Assembly: GCF_964204865.1 (NCBI RefSeq) | Contig: NC_135255.1 | Span: 11,532,001 to 11,596,000 of the forward strand | Source: Styela clava | Taxonomy: Eukaryota | DNA length: 64,000 nucleotides | Direction of reading: 5' to 3' | Part shown: positions 40,681-50,894 of the stretch, in pieces | Position numbering within the stretch: the stretch's first letter is position 1 | Layout of the letters: each line of letters starts with the position of its first letter | Program-made: the position numbers and the translations under genes | Notes under the pieces: model-generated | The model's database searches: none | What the model was told of the DNA's origin: nothing | What the model saw: only the letters and a program-made list of their open reading frames with translations

Positions 40681-40971
40681 CTAGCTTGATGGTGTCAAAA
40701 GTGAGCTAATTGTGTTTTCAACTTCTTTAGACGATTGGTTTGCCAGCGATGCACTATATTCCACTCCAAATGGATGACGAGCATAGACTTTCGGTTCTAT
40801 GTTGCTACATTCTCGGATAAGGATTGGGAAACCAGGATTTTCTTTCTTGATTGCGACATATCTATTCTCTACAAAATCTCGAACTCCTTGACTGGATGAT
40901 GACTTCTGACATAAATGTATTCGAAGTTCACGAATGTGCTTTGACAAATTAACAAGTTGCTTTGCCGCCAT
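40681..40971 (-). CDS. NDUFA2: NADH:ubiquinone oxidoreductase subunit A2 (CI-B8), intronless, 96 aa
   Basis: RELRIHLCQKSSSSQGVRDFVE..Y..IKKENPGFPILIRECS..EPKVYAR..FG.E. Confidence 0.97.
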   Translation of the reverse strand: MAAKQLVNLSKHIRELRIHLCQKSSSSQGVRDFVENRYVAIKKENPGFPILIRECSNIEPKVYARHPFGVEYSASLANQSSKEVENTISSLLTPSS

Positions 40972-41384
40972 CTTTTATTCTTCTTTGGATCCCCTTGAAC
41001 CTGCTCGTATATATTACTGTATTAGTATTGCAGAAGCAATAATAAAAAATAAATATAAAAAAATGACAGTTTTTTATATGATATTTCCACACTATTCACA
41101 CCGAACAAGGCCCTGCATAAGCAGCTATTGCAGTATTGATAGGTCTGTAGGTGGGAAGCTGCTATTTTCAGAAAACAAAACGAACTAGCCTCTTAGCTAG
41201 TCTATGTATGAGTAGGACTCTGCCGTGAACCACGCTATGGCATTGAGGAGCCCCGCAATCTCCTTGCACATAATAAAATGAATTTACGGCTGCAGGGTGC
41301 TTTATCAAAAAACATTCGTCTGTCTGTCTGGAGTTGTGCACTCGCGCATCTTTACTCGCGCAGCGTTACTGGACTGGCGTTACC

Positions 41385-41420
41385 CAAAGTGACTATAACT
41401 AACTATTTATAGTCACTTTG
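41385..41420. mobile_element. 36-bp palindromic transposon footprint with perfect 8-bp TSD
   Basis: GCGTTACC [CAAAGTGACTATAA CTAACTAT TTATAGTCACTTTG] GCGTTACC. Confidence 0.8.
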
Positions 41421-42861
41421 GCGTTACCGTGCCGGTAGTGCTCTGACTCAAATCAAACTCCAAATAAATACTATATAATATATCTGAATAAATATATAAA
41501 TCTGACAAAAATATCTGAATATTCGAGAAAACATTTTGCGATACAGCTTTGTCTGAAAGAAAATATGCGAACGCTTTGCGCAAACTGATTCATGTGTGAA
41601 TGCAGTTTCTCGAGAACAGCATTTGCGAGAACAAATTTTCGCGTAAACGTATTTTTCAAAAATGTAATTTTGTGACAAAATATTGAAATCTCGGACAACC
41701 TACTTTTCCGAGACTGTAAATTTATGCAAACGAATTTTGCAGAATTGCAGTTCCGACATCGTGACACTGGACAGAAGTTTGTTCTCGCAAAGCTAGGTTC
41801 TCCACATCCTTTTTTTCGTGCATCATACAGTGAAAGAAGATCTCTGAATAAACTAGAAAAATAACCGAAAATAGAGATGAATTAACGATATATAGTATGA
41901 TCAAAATTTATCTAATAATTATCTTGCCTGCAGCAAACATCAATAACAAAACCAAGAAGCGTGTTGCAAATGTCGTGTTCAGAAATTTTACTTGAAACAA
42001 AATGCGATCAGAATTATTACATTCCAACTCTCTATATTCAATACGCCAGCTCATTAAATACCGTAGGAGATGAGATTTTAAAAAATTGGTAATTATAGAT
42101 ATTAAGAGAAAACGACACCTCTCCTGTTTCTACTAAAGTAGGATAGGACCTATCTCATTTGACTCTGAAATTTAATTTGAAAAAGTGGTGCGGGTGCGTG
42201 AGCATGACCATGTGCTTTAGCGGGAAGGTTTTGCCGATAAGAAATGATAAATGTTCGATATTCATTATGGAATTTATTATGTCTTATCTGTATGTAATGA
42301 TTTATATTATTATAAATAAAATTACATTTATTATAAAAAAATGGTATTGCAGCGTTACGGTACGGTATTGGTTATCTCCAAACAGTTAGGTACGGTACAG
42401 GTAGCATGTGTCGGCTGTCGCATTGTATTTCTGTACCGGTATTTTGGATATAAGATGCGATAGGTTAGGTACAACAGTACAATGCAAGGGTATATGACAT
42501 TTGAGTTGTGTTATAGAAAAAATCACGGTATCTTACTAGCATATTCATATATTTGAATATCATGATAATGGTACGGTACATTTTATAGTTTCAGCAGTTT
42601 TGTTCTGTATTTTCAAAGCATCCATTGGGTTTCACAATGCGATATAAACAGTAAGTCAGTAACACAGTAATAGCGTTTTATATTCACCCATTGTTTACAC
42701 TGTTATGACATTGAATTTGTGAAAATTCATTCAAAATAAATTTTTGAATTAAAAAACAATTGGAATATTTTTATGATCATATATATTTATATAGCTTCAA
42801 TACTTAAAATATATCGAAAATATAAAAAGTGAAACATTGCATACAGATATATGTTGTAGGT

Positions 42862-43305
42862 CGGGGGTCGGCAACCTTTTGTCGCTCGCGGGCCAAAATT
42901 AAAGGTTGCAAGTCATTGGTGGGCCGCACATATTTTTAGAAAGTTAATATCCGAACGGATAGCCGATTAATCACATTTTTCACACAGATCAAGAGTTAAA
43001 GTTTGAGCAGCGCACAAAGACTGATCATTTGAATATTTTCTGCGCCAATGAACCATTCGCACTCAGCATCAACTTTACTGCGTTTTGTTGCCATTTGTCT
43101 GATTATAATTAAATTGTAGGCTCATCAAACGAGTAATCGTGAATTATATATTTGTTAGGATATAATATAATTTAGTCTCAAAATAAATTATGTTAGGTAA
43201 AGAATATAATCGTCAAAACAGCTGTTTTGTTACTATAAATATAATTTAGTGAAGCGTCGCGGGCCGGATTATATTGCCTCGCGGGCCGTAGGTTGCCGAC
43301 CCCTG
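42862..43305. mobile_element. hAT-Charlie-type MITE
   Basis: TIRs CGGGGGTCGGCAACCT / AGGTTGCCGACCCCTG; TSD TTGTAGGT / TTGTAGGC (7/8, central TA); GCGGGCC subterminal motifs. Confidence 0.88.
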
Positions 43306-43723
43306 TTGTAGGCTATCTCATTCAATTCATTGATAGTAATGCTATGGCCATTTACTTTTTTCATATGTATTCAGTACTTCGGTCCTCGAGTGTAATGATT
43401 GAGAGAAATATTGTTTCTGTGGAAAAATAGGTTGGCATCATGTTATTAGTTATAATAAAACCCAACGAAAACATTTAAAACCTCAATAACTACTCGATCT
43501 TCGTTTAATAAGCTATAAATTAATCCACTGGTTTCCGTGTAGTTCACAAGTCAGGTACCGGTACTTGAATGTGAATCATGGGAAAATCTTTTACTACTGG
43601 AAAGTACATTAACCATCATACTGCCATAAGATGTGGCAAGGTTCAGTAACATGATTGCATGCTCATAAACTCTTTCACTCAGAAATAAGCTGAGTGATAA
43701 CAATTGTCAGTTTGTGTTGTTGC

Positions 43724-43902
43724 TAGTAGTGGGATTCAGCCGGTTTGCACCTGTTCTATAGAACCGTCTCACAGAATTTTATGAGTTCAGCGAACCGGTT
43801 AGCATTACTGAAAAAAAACATGACTTTTTGTAACAGAACCGGCTGATAATATGACATTTGTGTGATGGAACCGGCTGACAAAAAATTTGAATTCCACTAC
43901 TG
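43724..43902. mobile_element. hAT-family MITE with perfect 8-bp TSD
   Basis: TIRs TAGTAGTGGGATTCA / TGAATTCCACTACTG; TSD GTTGTTGC at 43716-43723 and 43903-43910; repeated GAACCGG. Confidence 0.88.
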
Positions 43903-44175
43903 GTTGTTGCCTAATCTTGAATCTAGGTATTAATCTAATTTTGTGGATTTTTTAATTAATGCATTGCTATTGCTAATTAATTCGACTTTCATCTTGACAC
44001 CTGGCAGCATGATCACCACCAATCACAGAATCAACTGATCAATTTTTCAGTGAACAATTGAATAAATACCGAAAATTCCCGATTGTCTGCTTGTGTCTAT
44101 AATACTTTTTAATTCTGTCTCTATAAAAACAGTTTATAGTAAATTGATAGATGAATTTTCATAAGGACTGCCACC

Positions 44176-45333
44176 ATGAACAGTTTCTTCAAATTAGGGA
44201 GAAGGCTAACTAACTGTTCTCGTGAAATTAGTGTATTTTCAACCTCACAACCAAATGGAACAAATCATGCTTGGCATAAAGCCGTCTCAGAAGCTGAGAA
44301 AATTGTTGGATTTCCGACGTCTTTTCTAAGTTTAAGAGCTTTATTGAGTGACGAGTTTGGTGGACTTGCATTACACCTAAGAAAACTGATAAGCACCAAA
44401 CATCCTTTACTAAATACAGCAAGAGGCATCATGTTCGATTCTAAAAATTATTTACAAACAAGAGGATTGGTTGTGTTACTTATTTCAAAAGCAGCTGGAA
44501 TCACAGATATAGAAAGTGATTTTACCTCAACAGAGATTTACGAAAAACAACGTGCTTTGGCTGAAGTTACTGAACTAATTCATGTTGCATTCCTCGTCCA
44601 TAGAGGCATTGTGGATGTGAATCAGATTGTTGGGAATGTAAGTAAAACAGATATTGACTTTGGTAACAAACTTGCAGTATTAGGAGGTGATTTCTTACTT
44701 GCTAATGCATGTACTGGCTTAGCAAAACTGCAAAACACTCAAGTTGTAGATCTCATGTCAACATCGATTAAAGATATATCAAGTTCACTTGTAATTCTAC
44801 CAGAAAGTGATTCAGTTTGTGATGTCGAAATGCTTTCGGGACTTCCTATGAACGAAAATAGCTGGAAAGAGACAGTTCACCTTTCAGCTGGAAGTTTATT
44901 ATCGAATGCCTGTCGCTCAGCGATGTTGCTTGCATCGTCAGATGTTAAACTTCTCGAATCTGCGGAAAAGTTTGCGCATCATCTTGTACTCGCTCAACAA
45001 GCTCGACACGATTCTTTGAGATTTGATACATTAGAAGCCTTGGAACAAAAACCTAATTTTTGTTGCCTTTGTTCACTGCCTGTAGTATTACTAGCAGAAC
45101 AAAATGGTGGACTCGAATGGATAAAAAAATTTACTATTGATGAAGGTTTAAAGAATGTTAAAATAGATGTTGAAAAATTATTCCACACTGTAAAAAATGA
45201 TCCAAATGCTTTGCAACAATCACATAAATTGTGCGCAAATCATGTTGATAAGGCTTTAAATTATTTGCATGTATTTCCCCAAAGCGAGTCTAAGGATGCT
45301 TTAGTCAATATACTATTTTCTGTTAAGGAATAG
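44176..45333 (+). CDS. PDSS2: Polyprenyl (decaprenyl) diphosphate synthase subunit 2, intronless, 385 aa
   Basis: W..AVSEAEKIVGFPTSFLSLR.LLSDE, HPLL.TARG, RGLVVLLISKAAG, GNKLAVLGGDFLLANAC; HRGIV in place of DDxxD marks the non-catalytic subunit. GCCACCATG start. Confidence 0.96.
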   Translation: MNSFFKLGRRLTNCSREISVFSTSQPNGTNHAWHKAVSEAEKIVGFPTSFLSLRALLSDEFGGLALHLRKLISTKHPLLNTARGIMFDSKNYLQTRGLVVLLISKAAGITDIESDFTSTEIYEKQRALAEVTELIHVAFLVHRGIVDVNQIVGNVSKTDIDFGNKLAVLGGDFLLANACTGLAKLQNTQVVDLMSTSIKDISSSLVILPESDSVCDVEMLSGLPMNENSWKETVHLSAGSLLSNACRSAMLLASSDVKLLESAEKFAHHLVLAQQARHDSLRFDTLEALEQKPNFCCLCSLPVVLLAEQNGGLEWIKKFTIDEGLKNVKIDVEKLFHTVKNDPNALQQSHKLCANHVDKALNYLHVFPQSESKDALVNILFSVKE

Positions 45334-45363
45334 AATAAAACTGTATAGAATATAAGCATTGGT
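45334..45363 (+). promoter_or_regulatory. 30-bp PDSS2-COQ3 spacer: poly(A) signal followed by candidate trans-splice acceptor
   Basis: TAG-AATAAA(45334-45339)-ACTGTA-TAG(AG 45347-48)-AATATA-AG(45355-56)-CATTGGT-ATG; too short to hold a promoter. Confidence 0.55.
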
Positions 45364-46284
45364 ATGAAGCGATTGTTTGAATTATGTCATCGTTATTCCT
45401 TTCTTATACGGAAATCACACCAGACGATTGTGATAAGAAGCGATAATATTTTCACGACAATATGGCAAAATAATTCTGATTATCACCAAAACGAAAGTTC
45501 CACAAATGACACAAACACCCATGACCATGAAGAAACAAAAAAGTTTTCGGATTTATCTACCAATTGGTGGGATATAAACGGTCCAATGAGAGCACTGCAT
45601 TCAATGAATAAAGTACGAGTACCTTTCATAAGAGATTGTTTGATCTATGAAGGATATGGAAATGGAGAAATATATACAGACAAACCTTTGAAAGGTATTG
45701 ATATACTTGATGTTGGATGTGGCGGTGGTATTCTTACTGAGCCTTTAGCAAGATTAGGAGCCGACGTTGTAGGAATAGATGCATCAGAAGAACTGATTGA
45801 AATTGCGAAAAAACATAGGCTTCCAGAACTAGAAAACTTGCAATATCTCAATGCATTGGTGGAGGATATAGCTTTAGTGGGATCTTTAAAATTTGATGCT
45901 GTTGTGGCGTCAGAAGTTATCGAACATGTTTCAAATCCACATTCATTCATACAAACTTGCTCGAGTGTACTCAAACCAAAAGGGTCCATGGTGATCAGTA
46001 CTATAAATAAAACTTTACAATCATATCTTCTTGCCGTCAACTTCGCTGAGCGAGTTTTGCAAGTTGTACCCCGAGGTGCTCATGACTGGAATAAATTCAT
46101 AGCGCCAGAAGAAGTTATCGAATATTTAGATCATTGTGATTGCTCTTTTAGAAAAATTCATGGTATGCTATATAACCCGTTTTGTGATGATTGGTCGTTT
46201 GTTAGTAGTACCAATATGAATTATATTATTCATGCTGTTAAAAGACAAGATATTGACAATGACCAAGATAATGATATAGATTGA
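45364..46284 (+). CDS. COQ3: Ubiquinone biosynthesis O-methyltransferase, intronless, 306 aa
   Basis: WWD.NGP.RALHSMN.VRVPFIRD, ILDVGCGGGILTEPLARLGA, FDAVVASEVIEHV, STINKT, G.HDWNKFI.PEE. Confidence 0.97.
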   Translation: MKRLFELCHRYSFLIRKSHQTIVIRSDNIFTTIWQNNSDYHQNESSTNDTNTHDHEETKKFSDLSTNWWDINGPMRALHSMNKVRVPFIRDCLIYEGYGNGEIYTDKPLKGIDILDVGCGGGILTEPLARLGADVVGIDASEELIEIAKKHRLPELENLQYLNALVEDIALVGSLKFDAVVASEVIEHVSNPHSFIQTCSSVLKPKGSMVISTINKTLQSYLLAVNFAERVLQVVPRGAHDWNKFIAPEEVIEYLDHCDCSFRKIHGMLYNPFCDDWSFVSSTNMNYIIHAVKRQDIDNDQDNDID

Positions 46285-47656
46285 GTAAAATAAATTTCTT
46301 GGTCTTACAATAATGATTAATAATTCTGGTTTTTCGTTGTTCATTTTCTTTTATATCAAATGATTTGATATACTTTTGGTAAAAAATGGAAATGAATCGT
46401 ACACTATTTCATCACAGTGGAACCAAATGAGAGCTTGTCACATTTCAAGATTTTGGGAAATCACATTTTCGTAAATTATAGATCTATGCAGCCAAACCCA
46501 AAAAGGATGTGAAACATTCACTAAAACTAAAACAGGTAGAGCTTTAATACCCAGACCAAAAACATGGACCATGGTCCATAATGACAGAATCCCAAAAAGG
46601 CAATTTGTAAAAAATGTGATATAAGCTACTTTGGTTTTACAGTGGTGAATTTTTCTAATGTCTAACTTAATAAGGCCTAATTTTACTTCAAAGTTCAAAA
46701 TGGTATATTTCTGTGTACTACCTTCTATTAATAACAAGCTATGTAATGTTCTGAAATAGAGAATTCAGAGTTGATATACAAGCATGATTGTATGTAACAT
46801 ATCTGTTATTAAAAAGTAGAATCATAAAATTTTATTTTCGCATTCACAAATACTCAATATTCTTTGGCTTAATCTGCATCTTGAACAAAATGTCATGGCA
46901 TCCAATTTCTATTGTTTTTTACAGATAATTATCACCACCTTATTAATAGTTTATATACTATTGTGAATATATGCTTCTATAGTAGGAAGAATTTTTATCA
47001 TTTCAAAGAAGATCAACCTCATACATATTCAGCCAGAATTCAAAGGATTGTATCTTGATAATTCAGTTGTATCGAAGTAGACTCTTATCAGCCAAGAAAA
47101 AAACGTATGACTTTTTTGACTGATCCAATTTTGGCAGAAACAAAATCAGAAATTTTATCTATTAACTCTACACTCCTACATAGATGCTGATAGAAAAGGC
47201 CGATAGAAATCATATTTTAGTAAATGACTATAATCATGGGTTGAAATACAGTCATTCTGGGACAATTTTAAGACCCCGATGGATGCCATAATATAAGCGT
47301 CCGTTCAGTCGAGGGCAATCAATAAACTGATTTAGTCACTTAGACTCATTTTTTTCAAAAACCATCTCAACTCAATTTAAAGAATGATTCAATAGGGTGG
47401 TTTGACCACACAGATGAAGTCCTACTCAGTATCTCAACTTGAGTGGTAGCAAAATGATATCTATTCCAGTTAATTAAGATAGGTAAAATGTTACCCTAAG
47501 AAGCATATGTTATCCTTTCATAAGATATTTATCCAACCAATATGAAATGATTTTTCTCGGTAAAGATTGAGAAATCATGTTTGTAAAGTAGACTGTGTTT
47601 TTATTTCAGTACTTGAGTGTCAAATCCTGATTGCGTTTACTCAGTGTTATTGAAAA

Positions 47657-48547
47657 ATGTTGCGATCTTGGATAGGACTCTTAGGTAGGCCTAAGGTGAT
47701 CACATCTCAACTGTTGAAAAAGTCAAGATACTTATCAACGGCAGCAAATGATGAACTTGTTGTCCAACAACTTGATGGTGATGACGAAGGAATTGTTGTT
47801 CTCGGTTTAAATCGACCTAAAGCAAAGAATTCATTCAGCAAAAGTTTGAGTCAAAAACTGACTCAAGCGATCGAGGACTTACAGTACGAGGAAAAATTGA
47901 GAGTGCTTATCATTAGAAGCATGATCCCTGGCATATTCTGCGCTGGAGCTGATTTAAAAGAGAGGGCGACAATGCCACAAAGTGAAGTTGGTCCATTTGT
48001 ATCTCGTCTTCGAAGATTATTATTCGACATGCAGAACTTTGCAACACCAACCATTGCTGCAATAGATGGCGCTGCTCTCGGAGGTGGTTTAGAAATGAGC
48101 TTAGGATTCGACATGCGTATTGCTTCTAATAATGCTTCATTGGGTCTTGTGGAGACCAAACTTGCTATCATTCCAGGAGCTGGTGGAACGCAAAATCTCA
48201 CACGACTTATCGGAGCGAGTATGGCAAAGGAAATGATTTTTACAGGAAGAGTCGTAAAGGGAGAAGAAGCAAAAACCCTTGGTATTGTGAATCATGTTGT
48301 CAAGCAAAATGAAAACGGTGATGCTGCGTACTTGAAATCCCTTGATTTAGCTCGTGAAATTCTTCCTCAAGGACCAGTAGCATTGCGTATGGCAAAACGA
48401 GCAATAAATTGTGGCTCGGAAATAGATATTTCTAATGCACTTGCCTTTGAGCAAGCTTGTTATGCACAAGTGATCCCAACCAAAGACAGAATTGAAGGGC
48501 TCACAGCGTTTAGAGAAAAAAGGAAGCCAAAATATACAGGAAGTTAA
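47657..48547 (+). CDS. AUH: Methylglutaconyl-CoA hydratase (AU-binding crotonase family), intronless, 296 aa
   Basis: GIVVLGLNRPKAKNS, IRS..PGIFCAGADLKERA, PTIAAIDG.ALGGGLE, LVETKLAIIPGAGGTQ, NENGDAAY, EQACYAQVIPTKDRIEGL.AF.EKRKP.Y; upstream acceptor TTTATTTCAG (AG 47608-09). Confidence 0.93.
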   Translation: MLRSWIGLLGRPKVITSQLLKKSRYLSTAANDELVVQQLDGDDEGIVVLGLNRPKAKNSFSKSLSQKLTQAIEDLQYEEKLRVLIIRSMIPGIFCAGADLKERATMPQSEVGPFVSRLRRLLFDMQNFATPTIAAIDGAALGGGLEMSLGFDMRIASNNASLGLVETKLAIIPGAGGTQNLTRLIGASMAKEMIFTGRVVKGEEAKTLGIVNHVVKQNENGDAAYLKSLDLAREILPQGPVALRMAKRAINCGSEIDISNALAFEQACYAQVIPTKDRIEGLTAFREKRKPKYTGS

Positions 48548-49667
48548 AAAATTCTCGTAATCACCACATTTATTATTTTATTTAATTATTCGATCAATAT
48601 CCTATTGTTTGATTGCCATGCATGTGCCATAGGTGTGCATTCCACCACACTTTGCCAGCAGCAAGTTTTGACTTGTTACTCTTACTTTTTGCCAAACCAT
48701 TCTAGTCTAAAATCATTATTAGATTAATGTTGTACTTGATGCTGAAAACATGCAATTCGCCATAATAGGAGTCCTCACATTGAAAGTTCATTGTAATCAT
48801 GTCATTTTTATTACCCCTCGTTTTTGAAGCGCATTTGACTGAAATTGTTATCTCAAGCATAGACTTCTATTGTTGACATTTTGACTCCAGCCCAGTAAAA
48901 TTCCAAGGTATTCACCAGCTGTATTTTGTTAAGATTGTCTTAATTAAGAAATCTTACTTACTTCATGCTTTATGATTTTCTTTTAGAAATTTTACTTTGA
49001 TTATCACTGTTTAACTGAAGGTTTAAGCTTCAGACTCTCAATTCCGTAGAATTAAAAATTTCAACTCCAACTGACATGAATAAAATCTTGCACTATCTGA
49101 CTCCACAGTCGACCACATATTGAATTAGAAAAGTCCTGATACCGGGGACAATTTTTGTGTTAAAATTTTGAGATAGATTTTATATGAATCTTGTTAGAAG
49201 TGGAATGGTTCTGCTATCCTAATTTATTGTTTTGAAGCATAGATTATGTGTATTAGAGGTGAAGTTTGTACTGTCAAATTTCATTCCATTTGAGTATATA
49301 TTTTTTTTCTGATTGCTCATGACAAAATGAAAATCGTGACACTTTGTTGAAAACTAGGTATGCGTTTGTCAGAAATTACTGTTGTCATAATAAATATTAT
49401 TATTATTGGCAAACTAGTTTCCGCCTTTGAAAAATTATTTTGAATATTTATTCAATTTTAAAGCTTGAGCATTACTAAATCAATATTTAATAAATAATGA
49501 TATGTACTAAATCATTATGTAACCATGTGTTTTCTATATGATGCTGTGAATTTAAATATTATATTATTTACAAATTCGAACAATATTTTTAAATGACTGA
49601 GAAAAATTGATAATTTTGGTTGATTAATTTACTCATCTTAAATTATTCTCTATGATTTAGCAGAATT

Positions 49668-50894
49668 ATGTGGCGCCTAGTTTACCGTTTAAAAATAAGC
49701 AAAAGTGAAAATTATTTGGGCAGAGTTCTACCTTCTGGATCAGGTGTTTTACAATCAGTAAATCAAGATAGATATTATCATGGAAATAGGAAATTCATGA
49801 AAGTGAGATCAAAGCATAAATCAAGGAATCTTTTTGCACCCGTGGAAAACGTTCACGCCGTTCGCAGGGGTGAAAGATTCAATAGAAGATACACTGATAA
49901 ATATGGAGTCAGATCTGATAAATTTGTCCCACCTCATAAATTACCTGCCCCACGCTGGAATTGGGATTATGACTTGACCAAAAAATCTGCATCAACATTG
50001 CACGGTGTTCACTCTGATAATGTTGTTAAATTCAATCAAGATATTGTAGATAATAACCCACTCAAAGATAAACAATGGGAATTGGGAACGTGGGAACCCT
50101 GGTCGAAAAGATGTGGTGCTGTTGGGATTAAGCTAGGCGTACAATACATGTGGCTAAAAAATGGTACCTGTGTTTCTTCAACGCTCATTCAAATATTAGA
50201 TTGTCATGTTATTAAATATTTTTCAAAAGAAGAATACAATGGAAGAATTGCTGCTGCACTTATTGGTGCAAAAAATGCTAGTCCATTCTACAGAGGAGAG
50301 AAATATCACCAATTCTGTTTAGACGCTGGTGTACCAGTCAAGGAAAAATGTTTTCGCTTTCTCATTACTGAAAATGCCCGTCTAAAACCAGGAACACCTA
50401 TTTATGCAACTCATTTTAGAGTTGGCCAAAGTGTAGATCTTTTAGCTAAGTCTATTGGTTATGGTTTTGCGGGAGTTATGCAACGTTGGCATATGAAAGG
50501 AGGCCCTGCGTCACATGGAGCTACAAAATGGCATAGAAGAATAGGATCACTTGCAGATCGTTCTGGACGCGTTGTGAAAGGCAGGAGAATGCCAGGGCAA
50601 CTTGGTGGCACATATGAAACAGCGTATGGTCGAAGAATTTTCAGAATCAACACAAGATATAATGTTCTTTATGTGAAAGGAAGAATCCCAGGGCATATTA
50701 ATACATTTGTTAAAATTTCGGACACTTGTAATAAAAAATTACAACCTCGAAATGAAGATGAAGTGTTAAAACATATTGGTCCATTTCCAACTTATCAACC
50801 TGAATTAGTTGATGAAGAATTACCAGAAAACATTTATGATGATTCTGTTTTTGATTTTGATAATCCATCTATCGTGTTAAGGGAAGATTCTTGA
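49668..50894 (+). CDS. MRPL3: Mitochondrial ribosomal protein uL3m, intronless, 408 aa
   Basis: R.G.VGIKLG, DCHVIKY, KPGTPIYATHFRVGQ.VD..AKSIGYGFAGVMQRW.MKGGPASHGATKWHRRIG, KG.RMPG, RINT.YNVLYVKG.IPGH, PFPTY; upstream TAG/CAG acceptor 49659-49663. Confidence 0.95.
   Translation: MWRLVYRLKISKSENYLGRVLPSGSGVLQSVNQDRYYHGNRKFMKVRSKHKSRNLFAPVENVHAVRRGERFNRRYTDKYGVRSDKFVPPHKLPAPRWNWDYDLTKKSASTLHGVHSDNVVKFNQDIVDNNPLKDKQWELGTWEPWSKRCGAVGIKLGVQYMWLKNGTCVSSTLIQILDCHVIKYFSKEEYNGRIAAALIGAKNASPFYRGEKYHQFCLDAGVPVKEKCFRFLITENARLKPGTPIYATHFRVGQSVDLLAKSIGYGFAGVMQRWHMKGGPASHGATKWHRRIGSLADRSGRVVKGRRMPGQLGGTYETAYGRRIFRINTRYNVLYVKGRIPGHINTFVKISDTCNKKLQPRNEDEVLKHIGPFPTYQPELVDEELPENIYDDSVFDFDNPSIVLREDS

What the first reader, a model, noticed from the sequence alone, without database searches (positions are those of the whole stretch)
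44176..46284. PDSS2 and COQ3, two steps of ubiquinone synthesis, fused into a 30-bp-spaced dicistron
Seen: two intronless CoQ-pathway ORFs lie head to tail, 30 nt apart. The spacer is almost entirely AATAAA followed 8-16 nt later by AG dinucleotides, leaving no room for a promoter. Known: ascidian operons are resolved by SL trans-splicing, with upstream polyadenylation essentially adjacent to the downstream acceptor, and animal operons usually group functionally unrelated genes. Inference: a pathway-coherent animal operon coupling isoprenoid-tail synthesis to ring O-methylation.
Basis: partly seen in the sequence, partly recalled or inferred. Interest (0 to 1): 0.85.

Follow-up and report, generated by a model that had tools for sequence, protein, structure and literature searches.

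The report
Probable sea-squirt PDSS2-COQ3 operon
Two coenzyme-Q synthesis genes lie 30 bases apart on one strand in the sea squirt Styela clava, most likely as one of the trans-spliced operons sea squirts are known for: an old, tidy pairing, but not a new kind of system.

Summary
Window 44176-45333 (+) is an intronless, single-copy PDSS2 whose two Asp-rich catalytic motifs are lost. Window 45364-46284 (+) is an intronless, single-copy COQ3. They are 30 nt apart. AATAAA abuts the PDSS2 stop, and four AG dinucleotides lie within 37 nt of the COQ3 start.

The genome is Styela clava or a very near relative: the proteins are 98.7-99% identical to RefSeq.

Four unnamed tunicate assemblies in the query's protein clade carry both homologues on contigs of exactly equal length (2545, 3189, 5274 and 7107 nt). 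In Ciona intestinalis the two genes share a 9.9-Mb chromosome record and have near-consecutive RefSeq numbers. Linkage may therefore date to the Ciona/styelid split of about 390 Myr.

The layout meets the published working definition of an ascidian operon. Trans-splicing of COQ3 is inferred, not shown (confidence about 0.7).

Pathway coherence is real but weak as a statistic. COQ9 in the same genome sits 73 nt behind an unrelated ATG10-like gene, and Ciona already has functionally related operons.

Earlier notes from this scan record similar tight pairs elsewhere in this genome, but not this pair. Verdict: new member of a known kind, modest interest.

The parts
44122..44128 (+). TATAAAA 48 nt upstream of the PDSS2 start; a candidate core promoter element, or chance in AT-rich DNA
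   Evidence: not tested
44131..44165 (+). Four AG dinucleotides (44131-32, 44138-39, 44149-50, 44164-65) upstream of the PDSS2 ATG. The first follows a pyrimidine-rich run. They are possible trans-splice acceptors for the first cistron.
   Evidence: inference only
44176..45333 (+). PDSS2 (non-catalytic subunit of decaprenyl-diphosphate synthase): one exon, 385 aa, start in a GCCACCATG context
   Evidence: 98.96% identical to S. clava XP_039254979.1
45313..45327 (+). Pyrimidine tract plus AG (CTATTTTCTGTTAAG) inside the last PDSS2 codons; the best-looking acceptor for COQ3
   Evidence: use not tested
45334..45339 (+). AATAAA directly after the PDSS2 stop codon; the presumed poly(A) signal of PDSS2
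45334..45363 (+). 30-nt spacer between the two coding sequences. It holds AG at 45347-48 (part of a second in-frame TAG) and at 45355-56.
45364..46284 (+). COQ3 (ubiquinone O-methyltransferase): one exon, 306 aa, basic N-terminus of the mitochondrial-presequence type
   Evidence: 98.7% identical to S. clava XP_039254981.1
46289..46294 (+). AATAAA 5 nt after the COQ3 stop; the presumed end of the unit

Best explanation
PDSS2 and COQ3 form a two-gene, Ciona-type operon in Styela clava.

Proposed mechanism:
- One promoter upstream of 44176 drives a transcript through both genes.
- PDSS2 mRNA is cut and polyadenylated some 10-30 nt after the AATAAA at 45334.
- COQ3 mRNA is made by adding the spliced leader at one of the AGs between 45326 and 45356.
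- These acceptors lie at or before the expected PDSS2 cleavage site. A given primary transcript therefore probably yields one mRNA or the other, not both, as has been argued for Ciona operons that lack intercistronic DNA.

Shown here: gene identities, spacing, sequence signals, single-copy status, and old conserved linkage. Inferred: co-transcription, SL addition, which site is used, and mutual exclusivity.
For: 1. The coding sequences are 30 nt apart on one strand, so there is no space for a promoter and at most 30 nt for both UTRs.
2. The pair meets the working definition used for 1,310 Ciona operons: same strand and under 100 bp apart. In Ciona, 72% of downstream operon genes had 5'-full-length ESTs, which the authors read as consistent with SL resolution, and 60% of 5'-most operon genes are single-exon.
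3. Poly(A) signal and AG acceptors are interleaved within 37 nt of the COQ3 ATG. The chance of AATAAA followed by AG in a random 30-mer is about 1.4%.
4. Both genes are the only copies in the genome, so COQ3 must be expressed from this position.
5. Linkage is conserved. Homologue pairs lie on Logan contigs of identical length: 2545, 3189, 5274 and 7107 nt. About 0.006 such coincidences are expected by chance. The two protein trees agree for these pairs.
6. In Ciona intestinalis, PDSS2-like and COQ3 are XP_026695230.1 and XP_026695233.1. In a later annotation they are XP_078493350.1 and XP_078493375.1, both on one 9,879,317-nt record. In S. clava, XP_039254979.1, XP_039254981.1 and XP_039254982.1 run in the same order as the window's PDSS2, COQ3 and AUH, which validates accession order as a proxy for gene order.
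7. The same genome has a second tight pair of this design: an ATG10-like gene followed by COQ9, 73 nt apart, with a pyrimidine tract and AG right after the upstream stop.
Against:
- Most Ciona upstream cistrons lack AATAAA (16 of 18); this one has it.
- Pattern searches with the Ciona SL found no SL RNA gene in this assembly. I did not establish the species' own leader; earlier scan notes say SL gene arrays exist, which I did not check.
- The Logan contigs could not be read, so spacing and orientation in the other species are inferred from ORF and contig lengths only.
- Strict adjacency in Ciona is not proven.
Confidence: 0.7

Rival explanations
1. The genes are independent. COQ3 has its own promoter and start site inside the 3' part of the PDSS2 coding sequence, its mRNA is not trans-spliced, and the two transcripts merely overlap in a locally compact region.
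For: Nothing excludes it, because no RNA was seen. Both genes carry their own AATAAA just after the stop, as separate units would.
Against: - S. clava is not a compact genome overall. The neighbouring same-strand genes are 1.1-1.4 kb apart.
- A promoter buried in a conserved coding sequence is unusual, whereas operons account for about a fifth of Ciona genes.
- Linkage appears to have been kept for hundreds of millions of years. This fits a downstream gene that depends on the upstream one, although it does not exclude an embedded promoter that would also tie the genes together.
Confidence: 0.12
2. The pair is one promoter with alternative cis-splicing. COQ3 mRNAs start at the PDSS2 promoter and splice from a donor in the 5' leader or in PDSS2 to the acceptor in front of COQ3, skipping most of PDSS2.
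For: - A consensus donor GTAAGT lies at 44638 in the PDSS2 ORF. It is in phase with the AG at 45347-48, and the two ORFs share a reading frame.
- Earlier scan notes on this genome describe gene pairs that share exons (unchecked).
Against: - About 0.4 GTAAGT sites are expected by chance in a 1.16-kb ORF of this composition (my calculation frequencies).
- COQ3 has its own start codon and a presequence-like N-terminus, so it needs no donated exon.
- Homologues in five assemblies are called as complete separate ORFs.
Confidence: 0.08
3. A stable dicistronic mRNA is the functional product, and COQ3 is translated from it by reinitiation, leaky scanning or internal entry.
For: The contigs that hold both ORFs in four assemblies might be dicistronic RNAs, if they come from RNA runs. 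Many Logan proteins in these searches must be RNA-derived, for example full-length fish PDSS2 on 1.4-1.7 kb contigs.
Against: - Reinitiation after a 385-codon ORF is not expected under established scanning rules.
- The AATAAA directly after the PDSS2 stop argues for cleavage there.
- Tunicates have a standard way of resolving such transcripts.
Confidence: 0.05

Closest known systems
Ciona intestinalis SL-resolved operons (Satou et al. 2006, PMC1488885; 2008, PMC2760879)
   Same: Same-strand genes less than 100 bp apart, a single-exon 5' gene, mostly two genes per operon, and an acceptor AG at or next to the upstream gene's 3' end.
   Different: This upstream cistron has a canonical AATAAA, which 16 of 18 characterised Ciona operons lack. 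SL addition and abutting mRNA ends are not shown here. The species is a stolidobranch, and no operon study of it is in the held library.
C. elegans SL1-type operons without intercistronic sequence
   Same: The upstream poly(A) signal AATAAA is present, and the acceptor is essentially at the cleavage site. A single general leader would be used, and production of the two mRNAs is possibly mutually exclusive (as discussed in PMC1488885).
   Different: A different phylum and leader. This is analogy only; nothing was tested.
Ciona myosin light-chain / heavy-chain operon
   Same: An ascidian operon whose two genes work in one complex or pathway.
   Different: Different genes. That case has EST proof of abutting mRNAs; this one does not.
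ATG10-like / COQ9 pair in the same genome (G000 C4, locus L046 2495-3956)
   Same: Intronless same-strand ORFs 73 nt apart, the downstream gene is a CoQ gene, and an acceptor-like pyrimidine tract plus AG follows the upstream stop.
   Different: The partners are functionally unrelated, and there is no AATAAA in the spacer.

Membership tests
Ascidian (Ciona-type) SL-resolved operon | Neighbouring genes on the same strand separated by less than 100 bp (working definition of Satou 2006/2008) | tested here: met
   30 nt between the coding sequences; definition
Ascidian (Ciona-type) SL-resolved operon | The downstream mRNA carries the spliced leader, joined at an AG at the gene boundary | not testable with these tools
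Four candidate AGs exist.
Ascidian (Ciona-type) SL-resolved operon | The upstream mRNA's poly(A) site abuts the acceptor (no intercistronic DNA) | not testable with these tools
   AATAAA at 45334-39 predicts cleavage at roughly 45349-45369, at or beyond the AGs. This is inference only.
Ascidian (Ciona-type) SL-resolved operon | A polycistronic precursor transcript exists | tested here: inconclusive
   Four related assemblies hold both ORFs on one contig of 2.5-7.1 kb. Whether those contigs are RNA or DNA could not be learned.
Ascidian (Ciona-type) SL-resolved operon | The organism has SL RNA genes and SL trans-splicing | tested here: inconclusive
   SL trans-splicing has been shown in the tunicates Ciona and Oikopleura. 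The Ciona leader pattern found no convincing SL gene in this assembly. Earlier scan notes report SL gene arrays in this genome (unchecked).
PDSS2 (non-catalytic subunit of trans-prenyl diphosphate synthase) | Polyprenyl synthase fold with both Asp-rich DDxxD motifs degenerate, and orthology to animal PDSS2 | tested here: met
   PF00348 at 3.8e-18. The motifs read RGxxD and HDxxR against DDxxD in 3apz. The best named hits are PDSS2 of tunicates and vertebrates, and the sequence falls in the tunicate clade.
COQ3 / UbiG O-methyltransferase | Class I SAM methyltransferase with the glycine-rich motif, closest to COQ3/UbiG, with a mitochondrial presequence | tested here: met
   4kdc UbiG at 2e-49. 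COQ3 of Ciona and Phallusia at 57-58% identity. The DVGCGGG motif is present and the N-terminus is basic. The presequence was judged by composition only.

The most novel reading that the evidence does not exclude
The PDSS2-COQ3 unit is not a frozen accident. It would be an operon kept by selection since before the Ciona/Styela split (about 390 Myr) because it ties the supply of the isoprenoid-tail synthase subunit to a ring-modifying enzyme of the CoQ complex. Competition between polyadenylation at 45334+ and trans-splicing at 45326-45356 would set the ratio of the two mRNAs from each transcript. That would make it a conserved, metabolically meaningful operon in a chordate.
Probability: 0.15. 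Interest if true: 0.55.

Novelty: new member of a known kind. Interest (0 to 1): 0.33.

Why it matters
Ascidian operons are usually described as mixtures of unrelated genes, and it is unclear whether any are kept for co-regulation. A two-gene unit from a single pathway, apparently linked across lineages that split some 350-390 million years ago, is a convenient test case. It has clear assays: CoQ levels, the ratio of the two mRNAs, and a reporter with the junction mutated. It is also a warning for annotation. The two UTRs must share at most 30 nt, so gene predictors can fuse or truncate the models. It does not change what is known about how tunicate operons work.

Tried and rejected
- Metagenome scan with COQ3: it returned only bacterial UbiG loci at 25-49% identity and no tunicate DNA.
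- Spliced leader of this species. The Ciona leader plus GT(A), with 0-3 mismatches, and the leader tail plus the Ciona Sm site gave no SL gene. A recurrent 19-mer two mismatches away has 11 dispersed copies in a repeat-like context with no obvious Sm site.
- Promoter motif. A triple GAACCGGCTGA cluster at 43736-43878 looked like a regulatory element, but it belongs to an interspersed repeat with at least 175 genomic copies. Rejected as gene-specific.
- Larger operon. AUH lies 1,372 nt after COQ3 and MRPL3 1,120 nt after AUH. Both have good acceptors near their ATG, but no AUH homologue sits on a contig of the lengths that hold the PDSS2-COQ3 pairs. There is no support for extending the tight unit beyond two genes.
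- General clustering of CoQ genes. Two other polyprenyl-synthase loci (one presumably PDSS1), COQ4, COQ7 and COQ9 lie on other chromosomes.
- Retrocopy idea. There is no second, intron-bearing copy of either gene and no poly(A) tract after COQ3.
- Readthrough fusion. The ORFs share a frame, but two in-frame TAGs separate them.
- Rfam and the local repeat scan: nothing relevant.
- Literature. No held paper mentions operon together with COQ3 and PDSS2. The supplement of Satou 2006 is not held, and Matsumoto 2010 is not held.

Full report
WHAT IS THERE

They are separated by 30 nt.

The first ORF is a polyprenyl synthase (PF00348, 3.8e-18). Its best named relatives are PDSS2 of Phallusia, Ciona, Clavelina and vertebrates at 44-47% identity. 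In an alignment with a catalytic plant homologue, both Asp-rich motifs are replaced: DDxxD becomes RGxxD, and DDxxD becomes HDxxR. This is the hallmark of the non-catalytic PDSS2 subunit.

The second ORF is COQ3. It matches E. coli UbiG at 2e-49 and COQ3 of Ciona and Phallusia at 57-58% identity. It has the glycine-rich SAM motif and a basic N-terminus.

Each gene is the only copy in the 377-Mb assembly.

The COQ3 start can only be 45364. An in-frame TAG lies at 45346-48, and the next Met falls inside the conserved core. The PDSS2 stop is where its homologues end. The 30-nt spacing is therefore real.

WHOSE GENOME

The three proteins PDSS2, COQ3 and the next gene downstream, AUH, each differ at 4 residues from Styela clava RefSeq entries XP_039254979.1, XP_039254981.1 and XP_039254982.1. 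The window is therefore S. clava or something very close to it, as earlier notes of this scan had said. The order of those accession numbers matches the gene order in the window. This gives a control for using accession order as a proxy for gene order.

THE JUNCTION

The stop TAG (45331-33) is followed at once by AATAAA (45334-39). There are two more: at 45332-33, and at 45326-27, directly after the only good pyrimidine tract (45313-24), which sits inside the last PDSS2 codons.

By the usual rule of 10-30 nt, cleavage after AATAAA would fall at about 45349-45369. That is at or beyond all four AGs.

The two ORFs share a reading frame, but two in-frame TAGs separate them.

AATAAA followed by AG is expected in about 1.4% of random 30-mers of local composition. 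COQ3 also has AATAAA 5 nt after its stop. Four neighbouring intronless genes have none within 150 nt of theirs.

FIT TO WHAT IS KNOWN

In Ciona, operons are defined operationally as same-strand pairs less than 100 bp apart. Under that definition:
- 1,310 operons hold about a fifth of the genes.
- The mRNAs abut without intercistronic DNA.
- 72% of downstream genes had 5'-full-length ESTs, which the authors read as consistent with SL resolution.
- 60% of 5'-most genes are single-exon.

The present pair fits all the structural points.

One difference is that 16 of 18 characterised Ciona upstream cistrons lack AATAAA. Its presence here is more like the SL1-type operons of C. elegans that are discussed in the same paper.

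Satou et al. also argue that, without intercistronic DNA, a given transcript can give either the upstream or the downstream mRNA but not both. The geometry here suggests the same. This is inference.

CONSERVATION

The protein searches do report contig lengths, however. PDSS2 and COQ3 homologues occur on Logan contigs of exactly the same length four times:

| Contig length (nt) | PDSS2 homologue | COQ3 homologue |
|---|---|---|
| 2545 | P0125 | P0006 |
| 3189 | P0124 | P0004 |
| 5274 | P0126 | P0003 |
| 7107 | P0123 | P0241 |

With about 30 comparisons among lengths of a few thousand, roughly 0.006 coincidences are expected by chance. The two protein trees agree on these pairs: 2545 is sister to 3189 plus 5274 in both. 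On the 2545-nt contig the two ORFs leave only 463 nt for all flanks and the spacer, so the genes are tightly packed there too.

In the PDSS2 tree these sequences and the query form one well-supported clade. It is separate from the clade holding Ciona, Phallusia and Clavelina. Stolidobranchia is the likely identity of this clade, and that is inferred.

In Ciona intestinalis the two proteins are XP_026695230.1 and XP_026695233.1. In a later annotation they are XP_078493350.1 and XP_078493375.1, both on one 9,879,317-nt record. This shows close linkage. Strict adjacency is not proven.

By the published timescale, Ciona and styelids split about 389 Myr ago, and molgulids split from styelids plus pyurids about 350 Myr ago.

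AUH is not on any contig of those four lengths in the relatives. It lies 1,372 nt downstream of COQ3 here. The tight unit therefore has two genes. The five-gene operon suggested in another note gains no support.

HOW SPECIAL IS THE PATHWAY MATCH

Other CoQ genes are scattered:
- Two other polyprenyl-synthase loci, on C3 and C16; one is presumably PDSS1.
- COQ4 on C8.
- COQ7 on C18.
- COQ9 on C4.

COQ9 is itself the downstream member of a 73-nt pair. Its partner is an ATG10-like gene, and a textbook pyrimidine tract plus AG follows the upstream stop. This has two consequences:
- Tight pairs with acceptor-like junctions recur in this genome, which supports the operon reading.
- CoQ genes also pair with unrelated genes, which weakens any claim of design.

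My rough estimate is that random pairing would give a CoQ-CoQ operon in about 0.3% of genomes. Summed over a few hundred pathways of similar size, one coherent pair per genome is unremarkable. Ciona already has a myosin light-chain/heavy-chain operon. Once a downstream gene lacks its own promoter, linkage is expected to persist whether or not co-regulation is useful.

WHAT COULD NOT BE DONE

- The metagenome scan gave only bacterial UbiG.
- I could not identify the species' spliced leader.
- SL addition to COQ3, the PDSS2 poly(A) site and a spanning precursor therefore all remain untested.

VERDICT

| Explanation | Estimated probability |
|---|---|
| SL-resolved two-gene operon | about 0.7 |
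| Promoter embedded in PDSS2 | 0.12 |
| Cis-splicing from a shared 5' exon | 0.08 |
| Functional dicistronic mRNA | 0.05 |

No held paper links operon, COQ3 and PDSS2, and the S. clava genome paper does not mention operons or trans-splicing. The case is therefore undescribed in the library I could search. It is a new member of a well-known kind and of modest interest.

Noticed in passing
window 40681-50894: Five intronless genes for mitochondrial proteins lie together: NDUFA2 (40681-40971, minus strand), PDSS2, COQ3, AUH/methylglutaconyl-CoA hydratase (47657-48547; 3.8e-107 to human AUH, 1hzd) and MRPL3 (49668-50894). AUH and MRPL3 each have a pyrimidine tract plus AG 48 and 8 nt before the ATG, but they lie 1.1-1.4 kb from the preceding gene.
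   Followed up: partly
window 43736-43878: There are three copies of (G/A)AACCGGCTGA, about 300-440 nt upstream of PDSS2. They belong to an interspersed repeat with a roughly 32-nt internal tandem unit and at least 175 copies genome-wide. This is probably a small non-autonomous transposon, not a gene-specific control element.
   Followed up: partly
L046 2495-3956 (G000 C4:436994-438455): An intronless ATG10-like ORF (PF03987, 1.9e-31) is followed 73 nt later by COQ9. A long pyrimidine tract and AG lie immediately after the upstream stop, and there is no AATAAA. This is a second operon-like pair involving a CoQ gene.
   Followed up: partly
L045 519-4437 (G000 C18): COQ7 is intronless and lies 1,020 nt downstream of an intronless PSMD5-like gene on the same strand. 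A 126-aa ORF of unknown family lies further upstream. This is another run of co-oriented single-exon genes.
   Followed up: no
window 44638-44643: A consensus splice donor GTAAGT sits inside the PDSS2 ORF at a codon boundary, in phase with the AG at 45347-48. If used, it would join PDSS2 residues 1-154 in frame to COQ3. About 0.4 such sites are expected by chance, and there is no evidence that it is used.
   Followed up: no
proteins P0097 and P0141: In the frog Gastrophryne carolinensis, COQ3 and PDSS2 lie on the same 489,283,037-nt chromosome record. From memory, human COQ3 (6q16.2) and PDSS2 (6q21) are also on one chromosome arm. The tunicate adjacency may be a tightening of an old chordate linkage.
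   Followed up: no
G000, 11 dispersed sites (e.g. L034 1501-1519, minus strand): A 19-mer that differs at two positions from the Ciona spliced leader plus GTA recurs exactly at 11 dispersed sites. The one site I inspected looked repeat-like and had no obvious Sm site. Its nature is unknown.
   Followed up: partly
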